DNA of 64,000 nt, from the sequence record MT586120.1; one strand, given 5' to 3'. The notes beneath the pieces are model-generated. The model was not told the DNA's origin, made no database searches, and saw only the letters and a program-made list of their open reading frames with translations. Position numbers and translations under genes: made by a program. Below are positions 1 to 58,498 of the stretch, one piece after another. How positions within the stretch are numbered: position 1 is the first letter of the stretch; each line of letters starts with the position of its first letter.

Positions 1-2
1 TC

Positions 3-365
3 ATCGAAGAGAAAGTATCATTCAAAGAGAGTAAAGTCGGAGAGAAGTTAAAGCAAGCAATTTACGTAGGCTTCACTCGCAATAACGATTACATTGGTAC
101 TGAGATTGTAAACGAAGAAAATTCAACAGCACATTATCAAGAATTGGAAGAGGATTACAACTTCATTGCTGATAGCATCCGCAACGCATTCGATACTAAT
201 ACAACATTAGCAACTATCACTGGACCTAACAAACTCCTGCAAATTCGTACCAAGGCATCTAAAACCAACGGCAGATATGTGCCCCTATGTTATGCTGGTC
301 AGACAATGAAAGATAAGGCAATGGCGTTCTATCTTACCGCTGGTTTCGGTAAAGAAATCATGTGA
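3..365 (+). CDS. 5'-truncated ORF, probable MutH/Sau3AI-family endonuclease (C-terminal part)
   Basis: Frame is open from base 3 (IEEKVSFKESKVGEKLKQAIYVGF...), upstream of the track start at 144. ELEEDYNFIADSI...TITGPNKLLQIRTKAS resembles the C-terminal 'EDY/W..I...G..LQ.R.K' pattern of MutH/Sau3AI-like nucleases. Confidence 0.5.
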   Translation: MEEKVSFKESKVGEKLKQAIYVGFTRNNDYIGTEIVNEENSTAHYQELEEDYNFIADSIRNAFDTNTTLATITGPNKLLQIRTKASKTNGRYVPLCYAGQTMKDKAMAFYLTAGFGKEIM

Positions 366-380
366 GCCAGTTGAGCCACT

Positions 381-447
381 GGCACAGGGAGCCTAGCAGG
401 GCTCCCCCCAGCTGCTACAATTGATTCATACCAAACAAAGGAAACCA
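381..447 (+). promoter_or_regulatory. Early promoter cassette, family A copy 1 (GGCACA box, hairpin, extended -10, conserved leader)
   Basis: GGCACA 381-386; hairpin GGGAGCC-TAGCAG-GGCTCCC; TGcTACAAT (TACAAT 416-421); leader ATTCATACCAAACAAAGGAA before ATG 448. Confidence 0.8.
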
Positions 448-729
448 ATGGGAATCTCACTCGATCAGCAAGTCGCACAGCTCGCAGCCGAAGGTCATCA
501 AGAGATTGCAGTCATCAAACTCCCTAGTCAGGCAACCCGCAAGCGTCGCAAGCCTAGCAAGCGTCGCACTCCACAAACCACTAACGCGGTCAGCCAAACA
601 ACCTACACTCAAACCGAGAGCCGCAACCTAGGCAAGATTAGTTCAGCCTATGCGCGTCAAGTCCGAGCAGATAGAAGGGCAGCGGCTCAACAAAAAGCAG
701 CCGAGCTTAACGGTCAGCCAATCTTCTAA
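448..729 (+). CDS. Small basic early hypothetical protein (93 aa)
   Basis: ATG 448 follows the AAGGAA SD of the cassette (track start 421 lies inside the promoter). Contains RKRRKPSKRR. Confidence 0.75.
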   Translation: MGISLDQQVAQLAAEGHQEIAVIKLPSQATRKRRKPSKRRTPQTTNAVSQTTYTQTESRNLGKISSAYARQVRADRRAAAQQKAAELNGQPIF

Positions 730-731
730 GA

Positions 732-799
732 GGCACAAGGGGGCTAGCAGCTCCCCCCCTAGCTGCTACAATTGATTCATACCAAACAAAGGAACTCAA
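732..799 (+). promoter_or_regulatory. Early promoter cassette, family A copy 2
   Basis: GGCACA 732-737; GGGGGC-TAGCA-GCTCCC hairpin; AGCTGCTACAATTGATTCATACCAAACAAAGGAA identical to copy 1; same 29-nt box-to--10 spacing. Confidence 0.8.
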
Positions 800-1264
800 A
801 TGGCTACCTACACAAACGCTCAATTGATCGCATTCTTTAAGCAATGGGAGCCTAAGGTTCAATACTTCGGGATCGATATTGTCCCCCCTGGATTCTTCAA
901 GTTCTACAAGCAGGGTAGGGAGCTTGTTAAGGCAGAAGCTGCTGCCACCTTAGCAGCTGCTAAAACTAACAGCCGCACCCCCCTAACAGAATCCGAGCTT
1001 CGTCCCGTCTTCGAAGAGTACCTCGCAACATATCTCGATAATGGGCTTAAGGCTAAGGTCTTTGATCGCTATGCTCCAGTTGAAGCCATTAGCACCGAGC
1101 GCCTAGATAGGGTCGCTACCGTTATGGGTATCCATGGGCAGATCGCCGCTCGCGATACTAGAAATAACTCAACTAAGAGCTGCCTGGATCGTATGGGTAA
1201 AACGCTTGTAGCCATTCTCGAAGAGTACAATGAAATGGTAGGATTCGAGCGCTTCGCCGCATGA
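800..1264 (+). CDS. Early hypothetical protein (154 aa)
   Basis: ORF track; starts directly after the cassette SD. Confidence 0.8.
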   Translation: MATYTNAQLIAFFKQWEPKVQYFGIDIVPPGFFKFYKQGRELVKAEAAATLAAAKTNSRTPLTESELRPVFEEYLATYLDNGLKAKVFDRYAPVEAISTERLDRVATVMGIHGQIAARDTRNNSTKSCLDRMGKTLVAILEEYNEMVGFERFAA

Positions 1265-1273
1265 TTCTATCAA

Positions 1274-1335
1274 GGGGCTAGCCACCTAGCCCCGATCTAT
1301 GCTACAATTCATTCATACCAAACCAGGAACCGACA
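1274..1335 (+). promoter_or_regulatory. Early promoter cassette, family A-like copy 3
   Basis: Perfect hairpin GGGGCTAG-CCAC-CTAGCCCC 1274-1293; TGcTACAAT (1303-1308); ATTCATACCAAACCAGGAA leader. Confidence 0.75.
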
Positions 1336-1554
1336 ATGCCTTTCTCACCTGCCTGCCGCCTTTCAGACCAGACCCGTGTATGGGTTGAGCGCTCAATTCA
1401 CGAGGGAGTAGACCAGGCACTCGAAGCCAACTTCGGACCAGCACAGGGTCAGACTGCTACCGCCATTGCTCTCCGCTTCGCTGCTACGTATTCAGAGGAG
1501 GGCAAGACGATGAGCCTAGCTAACCCCACTAGCGGAATCAGAGCCGAAGATTGA
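1336..1554 (+). CDS. Early hypothetical protein (72 aa)
   Basis: ORF track; fills the gap between two cassettes. Confidence 0.7.
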   Translation: MPFSPACRLSDQTRVWVERSIHEGVDQALEANFGPAQGQTATAIALRFAATYSEEGKTMSLANPTSGIRAED

Positions 1555-1624
1555 CCAGCCAAGGGGGTTGACGGATCAGCCCCCTCTATGGTCTACAATT
1601 CTTACATACCAAACAAGGGAACCG
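1555..1624 (+). promoter_or_regulatory. Early promoter cassette, family B copy 1
   Basis: CCAGCCAAGGGGGTTGACGGATCAGCCCC..CTATGGTCTACAATTC..CATACCAAACAAGG; -35 TTGACG 1568-1573 inside hairpin GGGGTTGA-CGGA-TCAGCCCC; TACAAT 1594-1599. Confidence 0.8.
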
Positions 1625-1768
1625 ATGAACGCCAAAATCTACATAGCATCGATGACCATTGGCTTCACGCTCTCCACCCTAGCCATTGTATTTGGGGCTA
1701 TGTCCTTGGACTTCCAAGAGCCTTCGGCAGCAACCCCAGTTGCTCAAATCACCTGCCAAGGGGGTTGA
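1625..1768 (+). CDS. Small early membrane protein (47 aa, MNAKIYIASMTIGFTLSTLAIVFGAMS...)
   Basis: ATG 1625 after the cassette SD; one hydrophobic segment; stop TGA 1766-1768 lies inside the next cassette. Confidence 0.7.
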   Translation: MNAKIYIASMTIGFTLSTLAIVFGAMSLDFQEPSAATPVAQITCQGG

Positions 1769-1819
1769 CGGATCAGCCCTCTATGGTCTACAATTCATTC
1801 ATACCAAACAAGGGAACCG
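1755..1819 (+). promoter_or_regulatory. Early promoter cassette, family B copy 2
   Basis: TTGACG 1765-1770, 18-nt spacer, TACAAT 1789-1794; same hairpin and leader as B1. Confidence 0.85.
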
Positions 1820-2026
1820 ATGACGACTCTTCACTCTATCGAAAATCTCACAGCCGAGCTCGACCGCCTAGAGGGAATCAAGAATCGCCTAGCAGGGCTG
1901 ATCGTAGACCTTAAGCTCACCAACCCAGACTCACTATTCATCGGACTCTATCAGGACCGCCTCAAGTTCAATGTTCTCCCCGCCATCAAACTCACCAAGG
2001 GCTACATTCTCAAGACCAGCAACTGA
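1820..2026 (+). CDS. Early hypothetical protein (68 aa, coiled-coil-like)
   Basis: ORF track; between cassettes B2 and B3. Confidence 0.75.
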   Translation: MTTLHSIENLTAELDRLEGIKNRLAGLIVDLKLTNPDSLFIGLYQDRLKFNVLPAIKLTKGYILKTSN

Positions 2027-2096
2027 CCAGCCAAGGGGGTTGACGGATCAGCCCCCTATGGTCTACAATTCATTCATACCAAACAAGGCAACCCAA
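2027..2096 (+). promoter_or_regulatory. Early promoter cassette, family B copy 3
   Basis: TTGACG 2040-2045, 18-nt spacer, TACAAT 2064-2069; same hairpin and leader. Confidence 0.85.
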
Positions 2097-2189
2097 ATGG
2101 ACCCCATCTCATTCGCAATCGGTATGGTCGGCGCAGCTCTAGTCGGTATCGTCAATGCCGAGCTGATCAAAGCAAACAACAAAGATTGA
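2097..2189 (+). CDS. 30-aa hydrophobic early peptide (MDPISFAIGMVGAALVGIVNAELIKANNKD)
   Basis: ATG 2097 after the cassette SD; the track start at 1971 runs through the repeat. Confidence 0.65.
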   Translation: MDPISFAIGMVGAALVGIVNAELIKANNKD

Positions 2190-2229
2190 TCAGCCCAGCT
2201 CATCCCACTCAATCAAAACTTTTTTTCAA

Positions 2230-2454
2230 ATGACTCCTTCCATCTTTATCGACACTGAGAACAGCTCAACAGCCGTTGATGCCATCGTGCTCACCCCCCG
2301 TAGAGTTCAGTTCGCTTGGGCGTCTGGTTCCGTCTCCGCTCACACCGTCCGCCTCCGCGATCAAGTGAGATTCTACATCCGCCACTTGATGCTCGATGAG
2401 GAGCTGAGCTATGGTGCTTGGTCCAACTGGGTGCTCGATAATCAAATCCTCTGA
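2230..2454 (+). CDS. Early hypothetical protein (74 aa), weakly KTSC-like
   Basis: ORF track; SSTAVDAI...FAWASG...SYGAW loosely follows the KTSC pattern (weak). Confidence 0.65.
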   Translation: MTPSIFIDTENSSTAVDAIVLTPRRVQFAWASGSVSAHTVRLRDQVRFYIRHLMLDEELSYGAWSNWVLDNQIL

Positions 2455-2510
2455 CCCCTAGGCATCCTGCCCAATCCGTGCTACAATTCACTCAAGTCAA
2501 TCAACCGACA

Positions 2511-2699
2511 ATGCTCAACATCACAGCCGACCAGAATGGAACCATCTCTTGGCAAGAGGCTCTCCGCTTCGTGAATGAGGCAGCAGCTGATCAGCGCAAC
2601 TTCCTCATCCGTGATTTCTTACAGTCTGCTTACGCTGGATTGAGAGGAGAGAGAATCGACCTAGGTGAGCTCAACGTCTGGATCACAGAGAACATCTGA
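2511..2699 (+). CDS. Early hypothetical protein (62 aa)
   Basis: ATG 2511 downstream of a degenerate TGCTACAATTCA promoter at ~2479-2490; ends just before a terminator. Confidence 0.7.
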   Translation: MLNITADQNGTISWQEALRFVNEAAADQRNFLIRDFLQSAYAGLRGERIDLGELNVWITENI

Positions 2700-2707
2700 A
2701 TCACACA

Positions 2708-2731
2708 GCCTCCCGCAAGGGGGGCTTTTTT
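2708..2731 (+). terminator. Rho-independent terminator closing the early cluster
   Basis: GCCTCCC-GCAA-GGGGGGC followed by T6 (GNRA loop). Confidence 0.85.
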
Positions 2732-2753
2732 AATGCGTGCGTATCGACAGTAC

Positions 2754-2832
2754 TCGTTCGTGATAGGACAGTGCTATCCATTCGTTCGTGATAGGACAGT
2801 GCTATCCATTCGTGCGTTGAGGACAGTGATAT
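2754..2832. repeat. 28-bp tandem repeat (2 exact copies plus 1 degenerate)
   Basis: TCGTTCGTGATAGGACAGTGCTATCCAT at 2754-2781 and 2782-2809; degenerate TCGTGCGTTGAGGACAGTGATAT from 2810. Each exact unit holds the inverted repeat GATAG-N7-CTATC. Confidence 0.9.
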
Positions 2833-2965
2833 GGCGTTGCGGTCCATTGGGGGGTGGCGGCGTTACCTTCGTATATAAAAAGTACCTTCTATCTAAGCTA
2901 TAAAAGTAAAGATCGACCTATACTTATCGCTATTTAAAAAATTCTCCCAGATATTCCATGGACCA

Positions 2966-2998
2966 CAGAGTTGGCTCAGAGTTGGCTCAGAGTTGTCT
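2966..2998. repeat. 11-bp tandem repeat x3
   Basis: CAGAGTTGGCT CAGAGTTGGCT CAGAGTTGTCT. Confidence 0.9.
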
Positions 2999-3033
2999 CT
3001 ATATTATACCACACTTCTTAAATATCCCCCCAT

Positions 3034-3068
3034 AAAAAAATCCCCCAGGTATTCAATGCCCCTAGGAG
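3034..3068 (-). terminator. Minus-strand Rho-independent terminator
   Basis: Minus strand CTCCTAGG-N11-CCTGGGGG (8 bp with two G-U) followed by A-T7. Confidence 0.55.
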
Positions 3069-3177
3069 ATGATTATTATTATCTTGATAACATTCGCTTA
3101 TCTCTGTGTAATCCCTCTACACAGAAGTATTGCGTATATCTTCAATAAGTACTTAGAGTGTCTTATCAACCTCAACA
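3034..3177 (-). ncRNA. Candidate ~140-nt structured small RNA
   Basis: Bounded by a consensus sigma70 promoter (3183-3211, minus) and a terminator (3034-3068). Internal 8-bp stem TCTGTGTA/TACACAGA (3103-3125) and long-range TTGATAA/TTATCAA (3084-3090/3163-3169). The only ATG gives a 4-codon ORF. Confidence 0.5.
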
Positions 3178-3182
3178 AGGCT

Positions 3183-3211
3183 ATTCTACAAGTATCTCCG
3201 TGTGTTGTCAA
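3183..3211 (-). promoter_or_regulatory. Sigma70-type promoter, minus strand
   Basis: TTGACA-17 nt-TAGAAT with TG extension on the reverse complement. Confidence 0.75.
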
Positions 3212-3537
3212 GCCCCCATCAAGAGTATCCCTTTAAGTATCTCAACCATCCCCTGACAAACTGCACAAGGCTATTTAGAGAGTCATAAAAGAAGTATTTT
3301 CATTGAGATGCCGTAGGCACACACCGTAGGTGTGTTAGTAGAGATACTTAGAGAAACATAGAGAATCTTTGAGAAACATAGAGGACCGCAGAGAGCGCGA
3401 AAAATCCCCCTCTCAAGTTATCTCCGAAGAGAGTATTACAGAGAGGGTTATACTATTACTAAGGAATACCCATATACTCTACAACTCACTCCGAAGGGTA
3501 TAGAAGAGCTTAGTGGTCAGGGGGGAAATATGCTGTG

Positions 3538-3545
3538 TATAAATA
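3538..3545 (+). promoter_or_regulatory. T4-type late promoter with no adjacent ORF
   Basis: Perfect TATAAATA. Confidence 0.55.
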
Positions 3546-3782
3546 GAAGTGGAATACAAGCCTAGGAGCGTCTCTAATAGGCTCTCATCCTACGGGGGAT
3601 AGAGACACTCCGAGTTCCATTGAGGCTCCCCACAAAGGCATTTAGAGTACGTAGAAGAACATATAGTATCGTAGAGGTCCATAGAGGTCCTCTTTTTTTA
3701 TGGGCGAACCCTTTTTATGACCCTAGGGGGCAAGCCCCCACAATGAGGACCCATAAATACCAATAGAGAATATTAACTTATT

Positions 3783-4496
3783 ATGGCAGTTAACATAAGC
3801 GGTAATGGAGCTATTGAGGGTATTACTTCTTTTAATGGGGAGGATATTGCTTCTTTTAATGAGGGAGGTCCTACTTTCCGCAATATACTCTTTAATGGTT
3901 GGGTGAACACCAGTATTGGAATAAACCAACGTGGCAAAACAATAGCTCAAGTTTCTAATGGGGAATATTGGGCTGATAGGTGGCAACGTGTTTCATCCAC
4001 AACTATGACCCAGAAGGTTGAAGGGGGTAACTATATACCAAATAGGACATATACGTTATCTGGTAATAATGTAACAACAACACAAATCACATCCCCTGCT
4101 AGTGGAACTTGGGATTGGGGTACTGTGCCCTCCAATGCGTCATTGGTTCAGTTGGAGCTAGGTGATACTGCATCTTCTTTTGAATATAGACCCTATGGGT
4201 TGGAAGTAATTTTGTGTCAGAGGTATTATGAAGTTGTTGATTGTGAATATGGTACAACCGCAGTACTTGATGCGGGGAATTCGAATAAAGCTATAAAAAA
4301 ACCTTGGATATATAAAGTTAGTAAAAGAATTATACCAACCGCTATTGTAACTGCTCAAAGTGGTGCTTATTCTACCAATGCTAGTGTGAGTGGAATACGA
4401 AGTTCTTTTTGCAATCTCAATTGGCAATGGCAACAGACATCTGGAAATTTTGATAGGACCAAGGCTGCTGTAGTTAACGTCGATGCCGAACTATAA
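3783..4496 (+). CDS. Tail-fibre tip/adhesin-like protein, paralog 1 (237 aa)
   Basis: ADRW...QLELGDTASSFEYRPYGLE..LCQRYY is a motif typical of phage tail-fibre C-terminal modules; own late promoter ATAAATA 3753-3759. Confidence 0.7.
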   Translation: MAVNISGNGAIEGITSFNGEDIASFNEGGPTFRNILFNGWVNTSIGINQRGKTIAQVSNGEYWADRWQRVSSTTMTQKVEGGNYIPNRTYTLSGNNVTTTQITSPASGTWDWGTVPSNASLVQLELGDTASSFEYRPYGLEVILCQRYYEVVDCEYGTTAVLDAGNSNKAIKKPWIYKVSKRIIPTAIVTAQSGAYSTNASVSGIRSSFCNLNWQWQQTSGNFDRTKAAVVNVDAEL

Positions 4497-4527
4497 TATA
4501 AATACTAATAGAAAATATTAACTTATT

Positions 4528-5250
4528 ATGGCAGTTAACATAAGCGGTAATGGAGCTATTGAGGGTATTACTTCTTTTAATGGGGGCGGACTTACCTTTC
4601 GTAATATACTCTATAATGGGTGGGTAAACACCAGTAATGAAATAAACCAACGTGGCAAAACAATATCCGAGGTTTCTGATGGAGACTATTGGGCTGATAG
4701 GTGGCAACGTGTTTCCTCTACGACAATGACCCAAAAAGTTGAAGAGGGTAACTATATACCAAATAGGACATATACGTTATCTGGTAATAATGTAACAACA
4801 GTGCAGGTAACATCACCTGCTAGTGGGACTTGGGATTGGGGAACTGTTCCCTCCAATGCTTCATTGGTTCAGTTAGAGTTGGGTGATACTCCATCTGCTT
4901 TTGAATATAGACCCAAGGGGTTAGAGTTGGGTTTGTGTCAGAGGTACTATCAAAATCTCAATGTTAGAATGTTGTTAGATCAGGTGAATTATTTATTTTC
5001 TTCTCGCAATTCTTATGTTAATCCAATGCGAACTGCACCATCAGTAGGTTTTACAGGTAAGTTAAAGTGGGATGATTTAATTACCGGGCAGTTAAGTTCT
5101 ACTATCTTTGATTCAGATAATGTTAATGTTTCATCTAAGGTGATTCGGGCAACACCATTTTACCTTTATGTTCAGTTGCCGGGGGTTCAGCAGAATGTCT
5201 TTAAAAGGTATCAATTTGAAGAGGCTATTACCCTTGATGCCGAACTATAA
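4528..5250 (+). CDS. Tail-fibre tip/adhesin-like protein, paralog 2 (240 aa)
   Basis: First ~140 aa nearly identical to paralog 1; own TATAAATA 4497-4504; unrelated C-terminal domain; ends DAEL. Confidence 0.7.
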   Translation: MAVNISGNGAIEGITSFNGGGLTFRNILYNGWVNTSNEINQRGKTISEVSDGDYWADRWQRVSSTTMTQKVEEGNYIPNRTYTLSGNNVTTVQVTSPASGTWDWGTVPSNASLVQLELGDTPSAFEYRPKGLELGLCQRYYQNLNVRMLLDQVNYLFSSRNSYVNPMRTAPSVGFTGKLKWDDLITGQLSSTIFDSDNVNVSSKVIRATPFYLYVQLPGVQQNVFKRYQFEEAITLDAEL

Positions 5251-5281
5251 TATAAATACCAATAGAGAATACTAACTTATT

Positions 5282-5944
5282 ATGTCAGTTAACATAAGCG
5301 GTAATGGAGCTATTGAGGGTATTACTTCCTTTAATGGAGGAGGGCTTACTTTCCGCAATATTCTTTATAATGGTTGGGTGAACACCAGTAGTGAAATCAA
5401 CCAACGTGGCAAAACAATAGCTCAAGTTTCTAATGGAAACTATTTTGCAGATCGATGGGAAAGAGTTTCATCCACAACTATGACCCAAAAAGTTGAAGAA
5501 AAAAATTATATACCAAATAGGACATATACGCTATCGGGTACTAACGTAACAACAGTGCAGGTAACATCACCTGCTAGTGGGACTTGGGATTGGGGAACTG
5601 TGCCGTCTGATGCTTCATTGGTTCAGTTAGAGTTGGGTGATACTGCATCTTCTTTTGAATATAGACCCTATGGATTGGAGTTGAGTTTGTGTCAGAGGTA
5701 CTATCAGTTTGCATATGCTAATATTAGAAGTAGTGCAGGGTATATTTTTGAAAATGCAGTAACCTGGAATACTCAAATGAGAATAAGTCCATCAATATTC
5801 ACTGGAGGTACACCCGTCAATTGTATAATTCGATATCTTGATATAGCTCCCTATGGGTGTCGTATGGAAGCAGTCAGCCAGCAACCTGATGGTACGGATA
5901 GTTATGCACTTGAGCAAATCTTGGAACTAAATGCTGAACTATGA
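5282..5944 (+). CDS. Tail-fibre tip/adhesin-like protein, paralog 3 (220 aa)
   Basis: Same N-terminal module; own TATAAATA 5251-5258; third distinct C-terminal domain; ends NAEL. Confidence 0.7.
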   Translation: MSVNISGNGAIEGITSFNGGGLTFRNILYNGWVNTSSEINQRGKTIAQVSNGNYFADRWERVSSTTMTQKVEEKNYIPNRTYTLSGTNVTTVQVTSPASGTWDWGTVPSDASLVQLELGDTASSFEYRPYGLELSLCQRYYQFAYANIRSSAGYIFENAVTWNTQMRISPSIFTGGTPVNCIIRYLDIAPYGCRMEAVSQQPDGTDSYALEQILELNAEL

Positions 5945-9080: not shown

Positions 9081-12000
9081 ATGATTGGTACTGGTATTGA
9101 TGTGAGAGTGAAGATTCAAGATATTGTTTCTTCACAACTTCCCGAATTTATTTTAAGTGAAGCGCCATTAACTGATGACTTCTTAAAACAGTTTTATGTC
9201 TCCCAGGAATTTCAGGGAGGTGCAATTGATTTTGCTACAAATTTAGACCAGTACCTAGACCTAAACAACCTAAGTTCAGATTCTCTCTACGGCACATTTG
9301 AACTAACCCAAGATATATCATCCACAGATACTGAAGTATTTGTAAATACAACAAAAAGTTTCCCTGGCGAGTGGGGGCTCTTAAAGGTCAATGATGAAAT
9401 CATGACCTATACTGGTATTACAACCAATTCTTTCACTGGCGTTGTAAGGGGCTTCAGTGGAGTAACTTCACTTCATGCTGAAGGTGCTCCCGAAGAGATT
9501 GTATTTAATGCCACAGAGGCTTCTAGCCACCTCTCAGGTGCTTCTGTAACAAACCTAAGCACATTATTCCTAAAAGAATTTTATAAAAAGCTCTCATACA
9601 CATTTGCTCCTGGTTTTGAGGACCTAGATGTTGATTCTGAACTTGATGTAGGCAACTGGATTCGACAGGTTCGTTCATTCTTCCAAACAAAGGGAAGTGA
9701 GGAGTCAATCATTATTCTCTTCAAAGTTTTATATGGGGAGAAGCCAACTGTTATTGACTTGGAAGATTTCCTAATCAAGCCATCAACAGCAGAGTACTCT
9801 AGGAGAGATTATGCGGTAGCTATTCCCGTTGAAGGAAATCCAATTGACCTCAAAGGTAAAACTATCTTTCAAGTAGGCAGCCCCAATGTATTTGGTGCTG
9901 TTTCTGAGATTGAAGCATTTACTCGTGATGGGAGATTGTATTATAGGATTTATTTCTTCGTATCTAATGAAGAGGTATTGAATGAAAGAAAGCTATTCAC
10001 AATTCCTGGAAGAACTCAATGCCAGAGGGAATGGAATCCTGGTGATACAACGCTCACCGTAGATACTACTATTGGCTTCCGCGATAATGGTGAGTTCATA
10101 ACAGCGGACGGCATTGTATTCAATTACGAACAGAGGAGTGTTAATCAATTCCTAGGTGTTACTTGTTCTGTTCCAACAAAGAAAGTTCTAATTACTGATG
10201 AGATCATTGACAATATAATTGTCTCTGGTATGAATGATCTTGGGGAAGAAGTTACTTTGCGCCTAACTGGAGTTATTTCTGATATTAATTTTGGTGATGA
10301 TATTCCATTTAATTTCCAAGGTGAGAAAATTCGTGTAGATACTCTAGGTGAAAGTATTTTAAGTAATATTGCTACTAGAGACGAATCAACCGTACCAGAA
10401 ATTATTGCTAATAGCTTTGTATATAATACAAGTGTTAGATTTGAAGTGGAAAGTGTTAATGGTACTTCATTCATTTTATCAGCACCTTACTTAGACAAAT
10501 CATCTATTGATGTTGGAGATACTGTTGATATCCTTCCACGTGGTGGTCAGAATGCTTATATCATAGGTGCTCTAGTTACCGAAGTTGATTTTGTTAACTC
10601 TACCGTTACAATTAATAACTCATTCGGTATTCCAGTTAACCAGTCACTGGATATTAGGAGAAATCAAAAATATGCTAATAGTAGTGGAGCTAGAATTGAC
10701 TATGGTAACAATGCCGTACTATCAAATGTTTTGAACTTATATGATGGTAGAGAGTACGATTCAAATTACTACGTAGCAACTAATTCACTACCATCCTATG
10801 AAATCTCTGCCAATATTGTAGAGAGTTCATTAGTTAGTCCAACACAACAGAGCTTTGATGATTTTAATAGTTTCACTGGTGAGTATTCAACTATTATCTT
10901 TGCGGGTGATGTTAATTTTTATACCGGGGATTTAGTTACTTATTCCGTAAGTGAAGGAGCAACTTCATTAACTGAAACTGGGGAATATTATGTTCAAGTT
11001 CTATCTGATAGAAGAAAGGTTAAGCTTTTTGTTTCTCCATCATTTATTGGAAGTGAGAATTCAGTTGGACTTGTATATACTCCAGACTCAGGCTCACATT
11101 TCTTTACTCTAGAAAGTCAGAAGACACGTGAAATTTCAACTAAGCGTATTTTTAGAAAAATTCCTGTATCTGATAGTTTAGTTGCTATTGATAGAACTCC
11201 TGAAGAAACTACTCCTGGTTCTATCGCAGTATTGACTAATGGTGTGGAGATTGTTTCATATAAGTCTCCAAATAAAGTATACCTGGGTCCACTTGAGAGA
11301 TTAGATGTTGGATCACGTGGTGAAGGATATAGTGTAATATCTCCACCCAAAATCTACATTGCCGAACCTGATGTTCAGCTATATGAAGGTGGTACTGGTA
11401 GTGTAGTTCCTACTAAAGCTACAAGTACTCCAGTAATTAAAGGTAAGTTAGAGGAAATTCTAATTGACCCACAGGACTTTGATATTAAAGAAGTATTCAG
11501 TATCACTGTCAGGGGTGGTAATAGTCGTGGTGCATCAGCTGTTCCTATTATTGATAAAAAGAATAGGGAACTACCTTTTGATAGTAGAGTTACTACATTG
11601 GGTGGCGGTGTTAATCCTGATGATAACAGCATCCTTTTTCAGAGCAATCATAATTTAACAGAAGGAACTGCATTAGTTTATAATAACAAGGGTGCTGATA
11701 GTATTGGTATTACCCTTTCAGATAATACTGATTTTAGTACAGGTGCAACTCTTTCTAATGGTGGAGTTTATTATGCTAAAATATTAAACAATAGAACTAT
11801 TCAATTATTCGAGACTTTAGAGTCTTTGAATAATGGTGGAGATCCAGTATTTCTATCATCAAATCTAACTGGGTATGGTTTTCAGTCATTTGATACATTA
11901 AGGGCTGATAGATTGATTGGAGCAACAATCACTGATGATGGTGGAGACTTTTTCTATAGAAATATGTCCTTCAATCCATCAAATGTATTTGATGAGTATG

Positions 12001-15000
12001 ATGAAATCAGATACGTATCCCACGGATTTAATAGTGGGGATATTGTAGAGTATGGGACTACTGGAACTGTTATTAGTGGAATGTCCACACAGAATCAGTA
12101 CTATGTCTACAAAGTAAATGATAATGTACTAAAACTATCTGATGCCGGTATTGGAGCAACTATATCCAGCAACTATGATAGGTTGGAATTTGTTGACTTT
12201 AATAGTTCTGGTACAGGCACTCATAATATCAAATATCCAGACATCACAGCCGATGTTGTAGTTTCTTTTGCTAGTAGTGCAACTGGAACAATTGTAGCTA
12301 GTCCTATTATCCGTGGATCAATTGAACAAGTCTATACAGATGATGGTGGATATTATGGTAGTGATATTATTAATTTTGAAAAAAATCCAGAAGTATATCC
12401 AATTGGTGGGTCACTGGCTAAATTATCACCATCAATTGTTAATGGGATTGTTAATTTTGTTCAAATTATCAATACTGGAAAAAACTACTCTGATTGTCCT
12501 GAATTAGTTGTTAGTGATTCTAGCGGCGCTGGAACTGGTGCTAAATTAAGGGCAGTTGTTGTAGACGGCGAAATAATAGATGTTATCATAATTAGTGGTG
12601 GTATTGGTTATAATTCGGCATCTACAACTATTGAAGTCCTTGAGACTGGTAGAGATGCGCTAATTATTCCTAGAATTAGAGACCTAACAATCAATCTAAA
12701 TTCTAGATTTGGATTTGAGGTTCTTAGTCAAAATAACTATAGGATCGTATCATATAATAGAGTCCTTAGAGAAGGCGTTTATAGTGATGTTGGTAACTTC
12801 CACTCACCTATTATTGGTTGGGCTAATGATGGTAATCCAATTTATGGTGGTTTTGGTTTCTCCGACCCCCAGGATACTAACTCAGAAATCCGTGCTATGG
12901 AGACCGCATATGAATTGGCTCCCAATGATGTATATGGTAGACCTTCACAGACAGCATATCCAGCTGGTTTCTTCATTGAGGATTACAAGTATGTTGATGG
13001 TGGTGACCTAGATGAATACAATGGTCGTTACTGCCGCACACCAGACTTCCCCAATGGTGTATATGCATACTTTGCTGGAATTTCACCAGACCCACAGTCA
13101 AGTGCTAGAGAGCCACAGTTCCCATACTTCATTGGACCTAAGTTTAGGGATTCTGCAATTGATTCAAATAGTACTAATGTTGATCAGAGCTTTGATCTTA
13201 ATGATAAGCCAATCTTTAGAAATACATTCCCATACTATGTTGGGAGTCCAGTAGCTGGTAGTGAGTTCATCGATCAATCCTATCTATTTGATATTCAGGA
13301 TAGTATTGTACAATCAACTTCTCCAGGAACTATTGATTCCATTTCAATTGTTGGTGACGGAAAAGATTACTCCGTTGGTGATGTACCTTTATTTAATTCT
13401 GATGAAGATTTTATCAGTGCTACTATATCTCAGGTAACTGGTATTGGTGTATCAGAAGTTAGAGAAAATACCCTATCTTACAGTAAGTTAGATACAGCAG
13501 TAATTAGATTAGATCAGAAAACTATTCGCATATATGTTTCCCCCAATCACCAATACAATGATAACGACTCTGTTATTATTAGTGGATTAAGTACGATTAC
13601 ATCCACTATTAGTGGATCAAGAATTGTAAATATAGATAACTCAGCAATGACTCTATATTCACCAGTTCAGCCTATCGTAAATGATGGTGTTACTGATATA
13701 TTTGTAAATTCAATATCTCAAAATGTGAGTGTTGGATCTTCAATTGAAATTGGTAATCCCGGCGAAACTGAATTGGTAAGTGTATTAAATATCTTCCCAA
13801 TCAATAAGGCACTTCGTGTATATCGCCCTGTTGGGTTTAATACTGTCGCAAACATTGGTGATCTCGTATCACCATTACCAAACTTCTTTGATGTTAATGT
13901 TAGAACTCCCGAGTTTGAGTCCGAGCTTGACTATGCGTATAACTTCAATCCAAAACAATCTTTAAGTATTGCTCCATCTCTTGGAGAATCTACTAGTAGA
14001 GTTTATAGTATTGGTAGTATTGATTACCCAATATCAGTACCTGCTGCGTCAATTTATGCACCAAACCATCAATTTAAAAACTTAGAGGAAGTTGTATTTA
14101 CTAAGCCAGCTAATGGTATTAGCCTTGATGGATTGGATTCAAATAATAATCCAGTTGTTGTTCCTATCATTGGCGATAGCCAAGTGCTGTATGTTCATAA
14201 CATTTCCAAAGACTACATTGGGTTGAGATTTACTCCTAGTGACGAAGACATCATCTTCCTCACGGATGCTTCCGATCTATTCACATATTCTATAAAAACA
14301 AATAGGTTTGTTGAAACTGCAAACTTGGATAGAATTCGTGCCGAAGTCACTACTATTAAACCTCATCAACTAAAGAATAATGATACTGTTACTATTAGTG
14401 TATCTGCGTTGAATTCTTCCGGCATTGGAACTGCTTCCGATGTTTATATTCAGTTTGATGAAATTTCGCAGTCATTGATCGTTGATCCAAAATTTGCTAC
14501 ATCAGCAGATATCTCAACTGAATTGAATCTCGTCTTCATTGAAGATCACGGATATATTTTGGGAGACTATGTTTTATATGAGTGTGATGGAACTTCTATT
14601 TCTGGATTAACAACTCATTCCAAATATTTTATCATCCCATTTGATACCGATAGATTCTATCTAGCGGAAACTGCTATTGATGTTAAGATTGGATCTGAGC
14701 TTCCTATCATATTGGGTTCTACTGGTTCTGGTGAGCATAAGTTCTCCAAAGTTAATCCAGAACTCAATATTACCGGCAATCACGATATATTGTTCGATGT
14801 ATCTGATCCATCACTTTTAAATAGAGAGCTAAAGTTCTTCTACGATCAGAATCTAACAGAAGTATTTGAGAATAATGGTATTGATCCCGTATTTGTTGTT
14901 AGTGGAGTTTCTAGTGAAGGAACTATTGGAGCAACTAAAGAGATTAGATTCTCTGAAAACAATCCTGGAGTAATTTATTACGGTATTGAGTCTGGTGGAT

Positions 15001-18000
15001 ACATCTCCACATCAGATACTAATGCAATCGCATATAACTCAATTAAGTATGTTAATAGTGTATATTCTACTAAAGGAACTATCACATCAGAAGATGATAA
15101 TGTATTCTCATTATCTTTATCAGAGAAGCCCGAAGTTCCTCTATACACATCCACCAATTCCTTACTATCGTATACTACTTCATCCAAAAATACTGTTGGG
15201 GGTGTAGGTGAGGTTAGGATTATCTCTAGTGGAAATAATTTTAAGACTCTACCAGAATTTATAACAATACAAAGTGAGACTGGAAACAACGCATCATTGA
15301 GAGCAAATTCCAGTGATATTGGTAGGCTTTCATCATTCAGGATTCAGAATGCTGGATGGGCATATTCTGCAGATAAGACATTGAGTCCTAAGGGAATCGT
15401 CCAACCAAGTATTAAATTCACTAATTCTGACTTTGTATCTTCAATTGACGTTATTAATGGTGGAATTGGATATCAGGTAAATCCTGATGTTGTTCTAATT
15501 GATGCTATCACTAGACAAACCATAGATAATGGCTCATTAATTGCAAATACACAATCATCTAAGATTGTTGAAATTGAAATTGATGTTGCACCATCAGGTC
15601 TTTCAAAAAATCCTCACGAATTATACACAACTAATAATGGTAATGGTATTCCTATTCTTGAGATCATTGATATCGATTCAACCTCAGCAGAAGTAGTATT
15701 TTCCCTACAAACACCTATTATTGGTTATGCATCAACTCCATTTGAGATTGGAGACCAAGTATTCATTGAGAATATCTTCTCAGATAGTACTGATTCATCC
15801 AACTTAAATTCTAGTGATTATGGATATTCATTCTTTGATGTTGTTTCGGTAATTTCATCCAATCCAACTATTATTACCGTTAAGTATCCAGAAAGTGCGG
15901 TTGATAACATCTATACTGGTATTGGAGCAACTAATCAAGGTGCCTTCTCTTCCATTGTTAATAGGAAAAATTATCCAGAATTCCAAGTAAATCAAACTAC
16001 TGCAGTATTTGTTATTGGTGAGAGACTATCAGTTATTATTGATGGTGATGATAGAGAAACTGATTTAATTATTGAAGAATCCAATACTAATTTCTTTAAG
16101 GTCAGTGGTAATTATGACTTGCTTACAGGTGATACTGTTCGTGGAAACGTTAGTGGTATTGAAGCTACTGTAACGGATATCGACAAGAGTTTCTGTAGGT
16201 ACGTTGTAGACACTGTTAGTCGCACAAGTATTGGTTGGAGAGATTCTATTGGATTTACTAATGATGAATTTCAAGTAACACCAAATAATGATTACTATCA
16301 GAATCTTTCATATTCCATTAAGAGTACTATTGGCTTTGAGACACTTATTGGACCAGTCAATCGTCTAGTACATCCAGCTGGATTGAAAAACTTCTCGGAT
16401 ACTAAAATTGAGTCAATTGGTGTTGTTGGTCTTGGAACGACAGCTATTACAACCGACCCATCAATCACCATTGATTTCATTGGATTGACTGATGTATCAG
16501 ATACCCCATTGCGCGTTGATAGAATTAACGTATTTGATTTGGGGTATGATTCAAACGTTAACAATAACAAGACCAATGAGATCCGATTTAATAGCGCTAC
16601 ACCTGAGAAGAGGTTAACTAATTATTTTGAAGTGAAGACTAACCGAGTATTACTAATTGATGATATTAGTAGTTCATTTATTGATAGTGATAATCTAAGG
16701 GCTCAGAATGATTTTATAGACTTTGATGTTATTACTTCAGTTTATACTAGAGGTATTATTCAAGTTAGAAATCCATCTACCGATCAAGTCCAACTATCAG
16801 AAATTATATCTCTAACATATGATGATAATGCATATACGCTTAGTAAAGCTAGTGTATATGATGGAAACGTTCCGCACGGTATTTTCCAATCTACTTCATT
16901 AACTAGTAGTGATTATACATTGAGGTTTATTCCAACTGAACCAGATACATTTGATATGGATCTAAAGCTATTGACTCAAAAGTTTGATAGTAACTCTATT
17001 GGTGCAAAGGAACTTGGATATGTAACTCTTGGAGGTCTTGCTAGAACTGCACCTGCATTATCATCAACTCTTGTATATTCAGCACCAAATAATTCCATTA
17101 ATGCTGTAGCACTTCAAGTATATGTGCAGAAAGCAAGTGGTCAACCATCATACTATGAAGTATATGCATTTGTTGCTAATGGTGAAGTTTTATCAAAAAC
17201 ATACAATTTTACTGGTGATCCCATTAGAGAGTCAAACTCACCTGGATTTGACTTTATATCTATTCTAGATGGTGGTGGTAAGATTAGGATTTCTGTAGAG
17301 AACACGGATGCTGATTTCTTACGTATCAACACAAGAGAACTTGAGTATAAAGCAACTGCTTCTGGAGAAAATCCATACAGGTTCAAAAAGGATAATATCT
17401 TTGATGGTTCTGAAAGAGGATTGAATCTTCTATCCGAGCAGACTGTTGGGTCTACAACAGATTCATCCATCAATGTATTAACATTAAATAGTGAGCTATT
17501 CCAAACAGCCAAGTTGGTAGTATACATTGAGGGTACCACTATCGGTGCTATCCATCAAGTTATGGTAGCCAATTCTGATGGATCAACATACAACGAAACA
17601 TATCCATTCATTACTGAGGGTGATGGATCTGGTGGTTCGGGTATTGGTACATTTGGAGCTACTATCAATGGTAGTGACTGGAACATTGAGTTCTATCCAG
17701 ATTCCAGTTTTTCTGCGCAGTCATTGACCTTCACAACATATGCTGAAGCATTTTATCGCGAGTATGATGCAGTTAACTATGATCCAAGACCACTTACTTA
17801 CCAAAATAACGAAGAGGCATATTTCTTAGAGATATACAATACCCCTCTAGGTAATAGAACTAATAAGGTTAGTTTTCCAATTCAATATAATGGAATACCA
17901 GTATATGAAAAGGGGTTTGATCCAATTGCAGTCATTGATGATTCTAGTGATGTTATTTCATTGAATAATCATTTCTTTAGTGATTCTGAAGAATTGTATT

Positions 18001-32758: not shown

Positions 32759-34222
32759 ATGGTCGTCAATCCTTTCTTTTTACACGGCTCTACTCAAGAG
32801 CAAAACCTACAACAGGATCTCATTAATGAGCAGATCCGAATGTATGGTATGGATGTATATTACATTCCTCGTAATTTTGTTAGGGAGGCGACCATTATGA
32901 GGGAGGTAACTTCCTCTGCCTTCAGATCTTACTTTATTATTGAGGCTTACCTCAACAACTTTGATGGCTACGGCGGTCAGGGTGATATTATGTCTAAATT
33001 TGGTATCCAAGTTAAAGACGAGATCACCTTGACCTTATCAAGAGAGCGATATGAGAATTATATTGCTCCTTTCTTGAATTCTAGGATGCTATATCTTATG
33101 AATTCTGCTGCCGATGATGGCGCACTTCAAACAATTCAAAGACCTAGAGAAGGGGACTTAATCTATTTCCCACTAGGCAGAAGACTTTTTGAAATCAAAT
33201 ATGTAGAGCACGAACAGCCATTCTATCAGCTAGGTACAGGATATACCTACGAATTGCAGTGTGAGCTATTTGAATATGAAGATGAAATCCTCAATACCTC
33301 TATTGATGAGATTGATACTACCATCATTAATAAAGGTTTCATCAATACACTAAATCTAGTACCATTAAGTAATAGAGCAGAGGTTACTGCTAATTTGGGT
33401 ACTGGTTATATTAGAGAGTTGGTTATATTAAATGAAGGTAATAACTTTAGAGAAACTCCTTCAATCTATATAACTCCACCCCCAGAAGGTGGGGTTGAGC
33501 CTAATGTTGTCGCACTATTAACTAAAGCAGACTCAAATATTATTGAGCCAGCTATTAAGCAACTAGTTACATTCAGTAGTGGTTCTGGTTATATTGAAGA
33601 TCCAGAAGCAATTGCTGTAGGTGGGGGCGGTGAAGGTTCGATTATTAGGGCAACAATCAATACAGAATCTTTAGGTATTATTGATTTTGAGGTTACTAAT
33701 GCTGGTGCTGGTTATCCCGAAGATGCTGCGATTATTGTATATGATAAAGATAATAACCCAGTAGCCGAAGGTTTAGCATTGACTGACGGTGAAAAAATTG
33801 TATCCGCAATCATTAAAAATCCTGGTGCTGATCTAAAAGATGATATTAATGTTGTAGTATCTGCCCCAGCAACTTCTGGTGAAGGTGCTTACCTTTACAA
33901 TGAGATTATTATAGGTAAAGAATCTGGTATGCAGGCACGTGTTCGAGGTTGGAATGCTATTACTTGTCAATTAGAAGTCACTAACCTTGACCCAGAGAAA
34001 AACTTTGTTAATTTCCAGACAGGTGAGATTATTGAAGGTGAGAAGAGTGGTGCTAGGTATTCATTGAAAAACTTCAACTCAGATCAGACCCCAGCGGATG
34101 GTTTCAGTCAGAATGATGGAATCCAAGAGGAAGCTGATGTGGTTGTAGATACAAGTGAGTATAACCAGTTCTTTGATCCCAACCAAGATTACTTCTCATC
34201 TGATAATCCATTTGGCGAATAA
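32759..34222 (+). CDS. g14: Neck protein gp14
   Basis: NPFFL.GS..EQNL.QDLINEQI.MYG; RPREGDLIYFPL..RLFEIKYVEHE.PFYQLG. Confidence 0.92.
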   Translation: MVVNPFFLHGSTQEQNLQQDLINEQIRMYGMDVYYIPRNFVREATIMREVTSSAFRSYFIIEAYLNNFDGYGGQGDIMSKFGIQVKDEITLTLSRERYENYIAPFLNSRMLYLMNSAADDGALQTIQRPREGDLIYFPLGRRLFEIKYVEHEQPFYQLGTGYTYELQCELFEYEDEILNTSIDEIDTTIINKGFINTLNLVPLSNRAEVTANLGTGYIRELVILNEGNNFRETPSIYITPPPEGGVEPNVVALLTKADSNIIEPAIKQLVTFSSGSGYIEDPEAIAVGGGGEGSIIRATINTESLGIIDFEVTNAGAGYPEDAAIIVYDKDNNPVAEGLALTDGEKIVSAIIKNPGADLKDDINVVVSAPATSGEGAYLYNEIIIGKESGMQARVRGWNAITCQLEVTNLDPEKNFVNFQTGEIIEGEKSGARYSLKNFNSDQTPADGFSQNDGIQEEADVVVDTSEYNQFFDPNQDYFSSDNPFGE

Positions 34223-50450: not shown

Positions 50451-50455
50451 GTATT

Positions 50456-50881: not shown

Positions 50882-50936
50882 GTATCTCTATGTTTCTCTA
50901 AGTACTTAAAGTGTCTTATCAACCTCGACAAGGCTG

Positions 50937-50965
50937 ATTGTACTCCATTTTGAGACCCTTGTCAA
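50937..50965 (-). promoter_or_regulatory. Antisense sigma70-type promoter back-to-back with g55
   Basis: Minus strand TTGACA-17 nt-TACAAT; downstream sequence is a near-copy of 3146-3182. Confidence 0.7.
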
Positions 50966-51025
50966 GTCTTTACCATTTATTGTGAATCTGTGCTATAATG
51001 TATCCATATAAGCAGTAGAAGTGCT

Positions 51026-58406: not shown

Positions 58407-58432
58407 TTTAATCAATTTGACCACCTATCAAA

Positions 58433-58477: not shown

Positions 58478-58498
58478 CACATACAACACAAGCCCATT

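What the first reader, a model, noticed from the sequence alone, without database searches (positions are those of the whole stretch)
381..2096. Array of single-gene cassettes, each headed by a repeated hairpin-promoter-leader unit
Six ~65-70 bp units (381, 732, 1274, 1555, 1755, 2027) in two sequence families each carry a GC-rich stem-loop, a TACAAT -10 and the shared leader CATACCAAAC..GG. Each precedes one unrelated, mostly tiny ORF. This looks like the PeSL (promoter-early stem-loop) cassettes described in pseudo-T-even coliphages, where recombination between repeats excises, duplicates or shuffles single genes. Here it would be a distinct sequence family in a cyanophage: an integron-like, recombinase-free gene-shuffling array for host-takeover or anti-defence genes. 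The region also appears GC-richer than the structural genes.
Basis: partly seen in the sequence, partly recalled or inferred. Interest (0 to 1): 0.7.

Follow-up and report, generated by a model that had tools for sequence, protein, structure and literature searches.

The report
Promoter-hairpin gene cassettes in a cyanophage
The repeats are real: each is a small hairpin, promoter and leader module in front of one tiny gene of cyanophage S-CAM7. Related phages gain, lose, swap and reorder genes exactly at these modules, as at the PeSL cassettes known from T4-like phages of enteric bacteria and vibrios.

Summary
The window is Synechococcus phage S-CAM7 isolate 0809CC03 (MT586120.1, bases 62001-126000). 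It holds six units sharing a 22-nt core, where none is expected by chance, plus a degenerate seventh. They are the tail of an array: 12 strict copies lie within a 5.2-kb span and one more lies 7.5 kb upstream. No others occur in the 221-kb genome.

[quoted passage not shown] It contains a short box, a GC-rich hairpin, a TACAAT -10, a conserved leader and a purine-rich ribosome-binding stretch. The -10 comes with either a TGn extension or a TTGACG -35.

Among three isolates and seven wild contigs:
- One slot holds four unrelated genes.
- One 195-bp cassette is missing through a crossover inside the hairpin.
- Two cassettes are transposed.
- Hairpin types move between slots.

Phage ACG-2014f carries a sister family of units.

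This is a PeSL-type array in a cyanomyovirus: a new member of a known kind with a variant layout, because the hairpin sits where the -35 would be. Promoter timing, terminator activity and excised circles are untested. The cargo genes have no known function. Their GC3 is 57%, against 25% in structural genes.

The parts
1..365 (+). 3' end of a 196-aa cassette gene (CC030809_00107, starts 226 nt left of the window). It sits in the slot that holds four alternative, unrelated genes in relatives.
   Evidence: no BLASTP similarity to the 189-aa gene at the same slot in SB42/CC49
366..447 (+). Box ACTGGCACA 378-386; hairpin 387-406; TG 413-414; TACAAT 416-421; leader CATACCAAAC 427-436; AAGGAA 438-443.
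448..729 (+). Cassette ORF of 93 aa, very basic. It is 89% identical in SB42.
   Evidence: phrog_36237, unknown function
730..799 (+). Box 730-737; G-run/C-run hairpin 739-757; TG 764-765; TACAAT 767-772; leader 778-787. In SB42 and CC49 the hairpin type at this slot is a different one.
800..1264 (+). Cassette ORF of 154 aa, all-alpha and hypervariable. It is 31% identical to the SB42 allele although the flanks are 89-97% identical in DNA. It is absent from wild contig L007, and metagenomes hold mosaic alleles.
1265..1335 (+). Hairpin 1274-1293 (8-bp stem, 4-nt loop); TG 1300-1301; TACAAT 1303-1308; leader 1314-1323.
1336..1554 (+). Cassette ORF of 72 aa.
   Evidence: phrog_30762; 75% identical in L007
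1555..1624 (+). Hairpin 1563-1584; TTGACG 1568-1573 inside the hairpin; 20-nt spacer; TACAAT 1594-1599; leader 1605-1614, with two changes just 5' of it (1602, 1604).
1625..1768 (+). Cassette ORF of 47 aa, a predicted membrane peptide. Its stop codon lies inside the TTGACG of unit 5. The whole 195-bp cassette is absent from isolate CC49 and from L007 and L020.
1749..1819 (+). Hairpin 1760-1781; TTGACG 1765-1770; 18-nt spacer; TACAAT 1789-1794; leader 1800-1809.
1820..2026 (+). Cassette ORF of 68 aa. Homologues are about 50% identical in ACG-2014f, where the gene sits at a different place in the order.
   Evidence: (phrog_3340)
2027..2096 (+). Hairpin 2035-2056; TTGACG 2040-2045; 18-nt spacer; TACAAT 2064-2069; leader 2075-2084.
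2097..2189 (+). Tentative cassette ORF of 30 aa, hydrophobic. GenBank instead annotates an overlapping 72-aa frame from 1971.
   Evidence: this stretch is absent between the unit and the next gene in L020
2230..2454 (+). ORF of 74 aa with only a leader-like remnant upstream (a 'half unit'). In wild contig L020 a full unit directly precedes the homologous gene.
2455..2510 (+). Degenerate unit 7. TG 2479-2480 and TACAAT 2482-2487, with no hairpin and a different leader.
   Evidence: (family D4)
2511..2699 (+). Last cassette ORF, 62 aa.
   Evidence: (phrog_25802)
2707..2731 (+). Canonical intrinsic terminator (8-bp stem followed by a T-run) that closes the array before the late/structural region.

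Best explanation
Each unit is a complete, self-contained expression module placed between two genes. It has five pieces:
1. A short box just after the upstream stop codon.
2. A GC-rich hairpin that would end or stabilise the upstream transcript.
3. A promoter of the host sigma-70 type, either an extended -10 (TGn plus TACAAT) or a -35/-10 pair with the -35 inside the hairpin.
4. A conserved A/C-rich 5' leader.
5. A purine-rich ribosome-binding stretch 5-9 nt before the ATG.

The units are the only sequence shared by otherwise unrelated neighbouring genes, and all point the same way. The phage's general homologous recombination therefore crosses over in them. The result is that single genes are deleted, replaced by foreign ones, transposed, or given another unit's hairpin, and each gene keeps its own expression signals.

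This is the PeSL mechanism of Arbiol 2010 and Comeau 2014, here in a cyanomyovirus with its own sequence family.

Shown here: the repeats, the hairpins, the promoter logic, the restriction to one array, and the unit-bounded differences among relatives.

Inferred: early timing, transcription from each unit, what the hairpin does in RNA, and circular intermediates.
For: Repeats and their location. There are six copies where none is expected by chance. In the whole 221-kb genome there are 12 strict copies within 5.2 kb plus one other, all on the + strand.

Promoter logic. Among 81 distinct units from six phage lineages, 64 have TGn and only 9 of those also have a good -35. Of the 17 without TGn, 10 have a good -35 (Fisher P = 0.0004). 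Units 5 and 6 score 10 of 12 as TTGACG-18-TACAAT.

Hairpin selected for pairing. The stems differ in sequence but stay complementary. Native hairpins average -13.0 kcal/mol against -9.5 for chimeras of arms from different units, and 0 of 2000 permutations reach the native value.

Unit-bounded variation:
- The slot ending at window 365 holds unrelated genes of 196, 189, 249 or 178 aa in CC03, SB42/CC49, six wild contigs and L007.
- CC49 lacks the 195-bp cassette. Its single unit is the left part of unit 4 joined to the right part of unit 5, with the crossover inside a 24-nt identical stretch of the hairpin.
- In L020 two near-identical units (differing only just before the ATG) flank a 62-aa cassette that is absent from L022.
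- Two neighbouring cassettes are in the opposite order in wild contigs and in the isolates.
- SB42's hairpin at one slot differs at 10-11 of 35 positions from its orthologues but at only 2 from a unit four slots away in CC03.
- Four of the five large differences between CC03 and SB42 across 36 kb end at a composite unit.

Sister family. ACG-2014f has more than 20 closely similar units. There, 12 of 32 breakpoints fall within 20 nt of a unit against about 4 expected.

Recombination machinery. UvsX is annotated in the genome.
Against: - No transcript data were available, so neither the start sites nor early timing is shown.
- None of the six hairpins is followed by a T-run, so they are not canonical intrinsic terminators.
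- The layout differs from published PeSLs. There is no AT-rich tract, and the hairpin overlaps the -35/spacer.
- The MAFFT-based covariation count is only marginal: 79.5% of cells paired against 76.4% in shuffles.
- Units are copies of one another, so the statistics overstate independence. Some ACG-2014f events are shared by two isolates.
- One large insertion in SB42 is bounded only by a 6-bp repeat inside a gene, so other mechanisms also act.
- Boundaries at units would also appear if recombination were uniform and only exchanges at gene borders survived selection.
Confidence: 0.75

Rival explanations
1. The units are only regulatory: ordinary early promoters with a transcript-end hairpin, copied along with the genes. 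Gene differences among relatives would arise by illegitimate recombination or independent acquisition. They would end at gene borders only because other products are not viable.
For: One SB42 insertion is bounded by a 6-bp microhomology inside a gene. In ACG-2014f, 20 of 32 breakpoints lie more than 150 nt from a recognised unit. Puxty 2015 reached this kind of conclusion for S-PM2.
Against: The CC49 deletion joint lies inside the identical stretch shared by two units, as homologous crossover predicts. Hairpin types move between non-orthologous slots. Near-identical units flank a present/absent cassette. Four unrelated genes share exactly the same two flanking units.
Confidence: 0.13
2. It is a site-specific system like an integron: a dedicated recombinase recognises the hairpin or the box and moves cassettes.
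For: The hairpin is conserved as a structure. The box sits at a fixed 27-31 nt from the -10 in several genera. Arbiol 2010 raised the possibility of a protein binding the G-run/C-run stem-loop.
Against: No recombinase domain was found in the neighbouring ORFs that I scanned, and none is annotated anywhere in the genome. Every cassette has its own promoter. The hairpins are 19-22 nt and near-perfect, and their sequences vary. The crossover needs only homology.
Confidence: 0.05
3. The box, the hairpin and the leader are mainly control sites rather than a terminator. The box would be a site for a phage or host factor, and the leader an operator for a translational repressor such as the phage's RegA. 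That would allow the whole cassette set to be switched off together.
For: The leader is the best conserved part and is shared with ACG-2014f and with wild contigs whose hairpins differ. The box-to-promoter spacing is constant. There is no T-run after the hairpins. regA is annotated in the genome.
Against: No binding data exist. The same box also precedes canonical terminators with T-runs elsewhere in the genome, which fits a role at transcript ends. This rival concerns one sub-function and does not conflict with recombination at the units.
Confidence: 0.3
4. The units are small mobile elements (MITE-like) that have inserted between genes.
For: There are many near-identical short copies, and they contain an inverted repeat.
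Against: All copies are co-oriented. Each fills the gap from a stop codon to an ATG exactly, with the ribosome-binding stretch in register. No terminal inverted repeats or target duplications are seen. None occurs in the rest of the 64-kb window.
Confidence: 0.02

Closest known systems
PeSL (promoter-early stem-loop) cassettes of coliphages RB49 and phi1 (Arbiol et al. 2010, PMC2839356)
   Same: Repeated, co-oriented intergenic modules in a hyperplastic region of a T4-like myovirus. Each has a G-run/C-run stem-loop, a sigma-70-type promoter, a ribosome-binding site and an ATG, and precedes one small ORFan. Insertions, deletions and replacements between close relatives end at the modules. A crossover was mapped inside the stem-loop there, as here.
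   Different: The sequence family, host and RNA polymerase are different. Here the hairpin overlaps the -35/spacer instead of lying upstream of an AT-rich tract. Most units use an extended -10 and have no -35. An extra conserved box and a conserved leader are present. Terminator and promoter activity and mini-circles were measured there and not here.
PeSL and PmSL elements of T4/PST and KVP40/nt-1 (Comeau et al. 2014, PMC4122927)
   Same: These show that each T4-like lineage has its own PeSL sequence variant and that runs of consecutive PeSL-separated ORFs are rearrangement hot spots. 'Half' or degraded PeSLs occur there, as at window 2205-2229 and 2455-2510.
   Different: Those authors only conjectured that PeSLs exist in all T4-like phages and analysed no cyanophage. 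Their promoter variants keep a -35.
S-PM2 'ORFanage' region (Puxty et al. 2015, PMC4503421)
   Same: It is a cyanomyovirus with a block of small ORFans that is gained and lost.
   Different: They found one early promoter and two stem-loops, judged the density too low, and rejected a PeSL mechanism. S-CAM7 and ACG-2014f have dense arrays.
Integron gene-cassette arrays
   Same: Co-oriented single-gene cassettes separated by short hairpin-forming repeats, with variable content among close relatives.
   Different: Integrons have an integrase, attI/attC sites and promoterless cassettes read from one promoter. Here there is no integrase, each cassette has its own promoter, and exchange fits plain homology.

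Membership tests
PeSL cassettes of T4-like phages | Repeated, co-oriented composite motif in the gaps between small ORF(an)s of a hyperplastic region of a T4-like myovirus | tested here: met
   The phage is a Kyanoviridae T4-like myovirus. The array lies just upstream of the gp25/gp6 baseplate genes.
PeSL cassettes of T4-like phages | Sigma-70-type promoter in the motif | tested here: met
   TACAAT is present in all units. Units 5 and 6 have TTGACG-18-TACAAT. The others have TGn plus the -10. TGn and a -35 substitute for each other across 81 units. This is sequence evidence only; no activity was measured.
PeSL cassettes of T4-like phages | AT-rich tract upstream of the -35 | tested here: not met
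   The region upstream of the -10 is GC-rich (units are 51.6% GC). It is occupied by the hairpin and a GC-containing box.
PeSL cassettes of T4-like phages | Stable stem-loop, typically a G-run paired with a C-run | tested here: met
   The stem-loop is present in all six units and absent from the degenerate seventh.
PeSL cassettes of T4-like phages | Stem-loop placed upstream of the whole promoter | tested here: not met
   The 3' arm ends 8-12 nt before the -10. In units 4-6 the -35 hexamer lies inside the 5' arm and loop.
PeSL cassettes of T4-like phages | Stem-loop terminates or attenuates upstream transcription | not testable with these tools
   No T-run follows the six hairpins. Sister units elsewhere in the genome and in ACG-2014f do have T-runs.
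PeSL cassettes of T4-like phages | Ribosome-binding site and start codon at the 3' end of the motif | tested here: met
   AAGGAA, GGGAA or AGGAA lies 5-9 nt before each ATG.
PeSL cassettes of T4-like phages | Insertions, deletions and replacements between close relatives end at the motifs | tested here: met
PeSL cassettes of T4-like phages | Excised circular cassette DNA | not testable with these tools
   No sequencing reads were available.
Integron | Adjacent integrase gene | tested here: not met
   A Pfam scan of the odd-strand and neighbouring ORFs found no recombinase. None is annotated in the genome. I did not scan every ORF of the genome.
Integron | Promoterless cassettes read from one common promoter | tested here: not met
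   Every cassette has its own promoter-like element.
Integron | attC recombination sites | not tested
   No attC model was run. The hairpins are 19-22 nt and near-perfect, and Rfam gave no match.
Intrinsic (Rho-independent) terminator | GC-rich hairpin directly followed by a T-run | tested here: not met
   The scan finds only the site at 2707-2731 on the + strand of 1-4000.
MITE-like mobile element | Terminal inverted repeats and target-site duplication, with either orientation possible | tested here: not met
   All copies are on the + strand and in register with the stop and start codons. There are no flanking duplications.

The most novel reading that the evidence does not exclude
The box and the leader are shared across genera of Kyanoviridae. 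They are close between Mazuvirus S-CAM7 and Atlauavirus ACG-2014f, and a looser box occurs in Neptunevirus S-RIM8 and Sokavirus S-WAM1. They could act as common linkers that let co-infecting cyanophages of different genera draw on one pool of ready-to-express early genes. That pool would keep its own host-like codon usage (GC3 57% against 25% in the same genome's structural genes). The hairpin inside the promoter would couple the end of one message to the start of the next, and the common leader would let one phage factor silence the whole set.
Probability: 0.2. Interest if true: 0.7.

Novelty: new member of a known kind. Interest (0 to 1): 0.5.

Why it matters
Marine cyanomyoviruses are among the most abundant viruses on Earth, and most of the differences among their genomes lie in blocks of tiny genes of unknown function. 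If these genes sit in standard hairpin, promoter and leader modules that also serve as crossover points, that explains how the blocks turn over so quickly among otherwise 97%-identical phages.

It extends the PeSL idea from phages of enteric bacteria and vibrios to cyanophages. The only earlier look at a cyanophage, S-PM2, was negative.

It also gives annotators a simple sequence signature for early transcription units, true start codons and very small genes. For example, it picks out the 47-aa and 30-aa ORFs.

Tried and rejected
- My first regular expression for the core had one base too many and found nothing. One search corrected it.
- The MAFFT alignment of 20 units puts hairpins of different lengths out of register. 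The pair count on it is only marginal: 79.5% against 76.4% in shuffles, with 13 of 500 shuffles as high. I used per-unit folds and an own-versus-chimera arm test instead.
- Rfam gave no match at E <= 1 apart from one chance-level hit.
- Cargo function: none of the nine cassette proteins scanned matches a Pfam family. Five have PHROGs, all of unknown function.
- The 196-aa protein has no relative in the PDB by sequence.
- The 154-aa protein gave a moderate all-alpha model (pLDDT 77.8) with no significant fold match (best E = 0.37, TM <= 0.28).
I dropped those rows and sent them nowhere else.
- Doron et al. 2016, the Syn9 transcriptome that would bear on early promoters, is not held.
- The supplements of the 2026 S-CAM7 evolution preprint were not opened, since the tool holds none for papers added after Aug 2026. 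Its reported deletions therefore could not be placed.
- Blastn found the unit in no cultured phage other than S-CAM7. I found the ACG-2014f sister family only by reading intergenic gaps.
- MITE and integron readings were considered and rejected, as set out under the rival explanations.
Full report
IDENTITY AND EXTENT

The first 6 kb of the window match Synechococcus phage S-CAM7 isolate 0809CC03 (MT586120.1) at 99.8%. Motif positions place window base 1 at record base 62001. S-CAM7 is a T4-like cyanomyovirus (Kyanoviridae, Mazuvirus).

The six units are real. The 22 nt at window 415-436 recur at 766, 1302, 1593, 1788 and 2063 with at most one mismatch, against zero in 100 shuffles. The repeat finder returns the same families.

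The window cuts the array. Reading the upstream DNA (L004) shows the same units continuing for another 3.1 kb. I scanned all five pieces of the 221-kb genome separately. That gave 12 strict copies within 5.2 kb (record 58858-64063) and one T-run version at 51365, all on the + strand, plus a weak 3-mismatch hit at 50548 inside a coding region.

The array ends at a canonical terminator at window 2707-2731. A 1-kb non-coding stretch follows, then the baseplate genes.

ANATOMY

[quoted passage not shown] In order, it contains:
- a short box (ACTGGCACA at 378-386; a related GTGTCCAC form occurs elsewhere in the genome);
- a GC-rich hairpin;
- TACAAT;
- a 5-nt spacer;
- the leader CATACCAAAC;
- a purine-rich stretch 5-9 nt before the ATG.

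The hairpins fold at -13 to -24 kcal/mol. Their stems differ in sequence between units but stay complementary. Joining the left arm of one unit to the right arm of another loses 3.5 kcal/mol on average, and none of 2000 permutations is as stable as the native set. A plain MAFFT-based pair count is only marginal because the stems are out of register. No T-run follows any of the six hairpins.

PROMOTER LOGIC

Units 1-3 and 7 have TG one base before the -10, which makes an extended -10, and no recognisable -35. Units 4-6 lack that TG and carry TTGACG inside the hairpin. The spacer is 18 nt in units 5 and 6 (10 of 12 matches to the scan's sigma-70 pattern) and 20 nt in unit 4.

Across 81 distinct units from S-CAM7 isolates, wild contigs and ACG-2014f, TGn and a good -35 substitute for each other (9/55 against 10/7; Fisher P = 0.0004). 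Real sigma-70-type promoters are expected to behave this way, so I take the units to be promoters. That they are early promoters is an inference from established knowledge: T4-like cyanophages lack the T4 middle-mode factors and use the unmodified host polymerase early (as summarised in PMC3152331). No transcript data were available.

Isolates 0910SB42 and 0910CC49 are about 97% identical to the window across the array, except at discrete cassettes.

- The gene ending at window 365 (196 aa) is replaced in both by a 189-aa gene with no detectable similarity. Homology stops at or within 5 nt after the start codon (just after the left unit) and resumes at the stop codon where the right unit begins. 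The 196-aa gene has 60-62% identical homologues in S-RIM8, S-IOM18, S-M1 and other phages. The 189-aa gene has homologues in S-WAM1 and ACG-2014f.
- The 154-aa gene (800-1264) is only 31% identical to the SB42 allele. The SB42 and CC49 alleles share their first 64 residues at 95% and then diverge completely. Metagenomes hold many such mosaic alleles.
- CC49 lacks the 195-bp cassette between units 4 and 5. Its single unit has the left flank of unit 4 and the right side of unit 5. The switch lies inside a 24-nt stretch of the hairpin that is identical in all three sequences.
- Hairpin types have moved between slots. SB42's hairpin at one slot differs at 10-11 of 35 positions from its orthologues but at only 2 from CC03's unit at window 732. 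At the window-732 slot, SB42 and CC49 carry yet another type.

Six wild contigs that encode a 92%-identical copy of the 154-aa protein, and one IMG/VR contig (L007), add further differences:
- A 249-aa and a 178-aa gene occupy the same slot as the 196/189-aa genes, giving four occupants in all.
- In L020 two near-identical units flank a 62-aa cassette that L022 lacks.
- Two neighbouring cassettes lie in the opposite order from the isolates.
- L007 lacks the 154-aa cassette.

Over the 36-kb hyperplastic region, four of the five large differences between CC03 and SB42 end at a composite unit of some subtype. The fifth is an insertion inside a gene, bounded by a 6-bp repeat.

A SISTER FAMILY

ACG-2014f (Atlauavirus) has more than 20 units with the same plan and nearly the same box and leader. 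Its 40-odd isolates cover only 43-100% of this region. In three isolates, 12 of 32 breakpoints lie within 20 nt of a unit, against about 4 expected. Some of those events are shared between isolates, and my unit definition misses some subtypes.

Homologues of five S-CAM7 cassettes occur in ACG-2014f in a different order on the same strand.

S-RIM8 and S-WAM1 show looser versions. In these the box is the right half of an inverted repeat that starts at the stop codon. The box ends 27-31 nt before the -10 in all of these phages.

COMPARISON WITH WHAT IS KNOWN

PeSLs were defined in RB49/phi1 and extended to T4/PST and KVP40/nt-1. The defining features are:
- a repeated intergenic motif in hyperplastic regions;
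- a sigma-70-like promoter with an AT-rich tract;
- an upstream G-run/C-run stem-loop that terminates transcription;
- a ribosome-binding site and an ATG;
- association with indels;
- mini-circles.

Met here are the repeat, the promoter, the stem-loop, the ribosome-binding site and the association with indels. The AT-rich tract and the upstream position of the stem-loop are not met. Terminator activity and circles cannot be tested with these tools.

In the held literature, the only search for PeSLs in a cyanophage (S-PM2) was negative. I therefore file this as a new member of a known kind with a variant layout. It is not an integron: I found no integrase (and the genome annotations), and each cassette has its own promoter.

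CARGO AND COMPOSITION

The cargo is unknown. The window's cassette proteins match no Pfam family, and the PHROG matches are all of unknown function. One upstream cassette belongs to PF23790, Kyano_Gp96. The fold search of the 154-aa protein found nothing. Two ORFs (47 and 30 aa) look like membrane peptides, and the 93-aa protein is very basic. The 2026 preprint states that DefenseFinder detected no known anti-defence systems in these phages.

Cassette ORFs have 52% GC and 57% GC3, against 37% and 25% in the window's structural ORFs. Wild relatives show the same contrast, so it is maintained rather than recent. Two explanations remain open: selection for host-like codons in genes translated before the phage tRNAs appear, or constant exchange with a GC-richer gene pool.

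CAVEATS AND A NOTE ON CONDUCT

All functional statements rest on sequence alone. The units are related copies, so the P values are indicative.

The degenerate patterns were search queries.

One slip: while reasoning I recalled from memory a few short textbook promoter and binding-site motifs for comparison. The sigma-70 hexamers quoted are those printed and by the paper read.

Noticed in passing
window 2732-3782: A 1-kb stretch with no convincing ORF lies between the array's terminator and the first late gene. It is full of short tandem repeats: 28 bp x 2.9 at 2754-2832, 11 bp x 3.1 at 2966-2999, and 10 bp x 4.5 at 3339-3383. Part of it is conserved in wild contig L020 (7630-8154). Similar repeat-rich non-coding blocks lie upstream in the genome (L004 about 24300-25100, 25349-25795 and 27705-28067). 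Function unknown.
   Followed up: partly
window 3783-5944: Three tandem paralogous genes (237, 240 and 220 aa) have near-identical N-terminal halves and divergent C-terminal halves, and each ends in AEL. One record annotates them as tail fibre proteins; Pfam finds nothing. Wild S-CAM7-like contigs carry an N6/N4 DNA methyltransferase at this place instead.
   Followed up: partly
window 448-2699 compared with 6714-34222: Codon usage splits sharply within one genome. GC3 is 57% in the cassette genes and 25% in the structural genes.
   Followed up: partly
window 58420-58490: This is a lone unit of the other subtype, far from the array. It has a GTGACCAC box, a hairpin with a T-run (a canonical terminator), CTATAAT and a related leader. 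The same subtype bounds 3.4-kb and 1.6-kb replacements between isolates upstream (L004, record about 40316 and 49974-51593).
   Followed up: partly
L016 (KU686213 33086-34242) compared with L004 (record 32840-32845): SB42 has a 1157-bp insertion inside a small gene, bounded by a 6-bp direct repeat. It is not unit-mediated and I have not identified it.
   Followed up: no
L014 17316-17389 (MT586120 143316-143389): The record annotates a tRNA with anticodon CTA ('tRNA-Pyl'), which would read amber stops, at the head of the phage tRNA cluster. The 2026 preprint reports loss of 3-4 adjacent tRNA genes in evolved S-CAM7 lines.
   Followed up: no
window 9081-22025 and 23640-30827: Two giant ORFs (4314 and 2395 aa) lie just after the baseplate genes gp25 and gp6.
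   Followed up: no
L004 24499-24771 (- strand): The annotated 90-aa ORF that matches RTX repeats overlaps a DNA tandem-repeat block. It is probably a translation artefact and not a gene.
   Followed up: partly
L010, L011, L012 (ACG-2014f, S-WAM1, S-RIM8 intergenic gaps): In many cyanomyovirus early intergenic regions the stop codon is followed by an inverted repeat whose right half is the box (…TGTGCCAG…GTGGCACA), then a second hairpin, then the -10. This two-hairpin plan seems widespread in Kyanoviridae, and I did not find it described in the held literature.
   Followed up: partly
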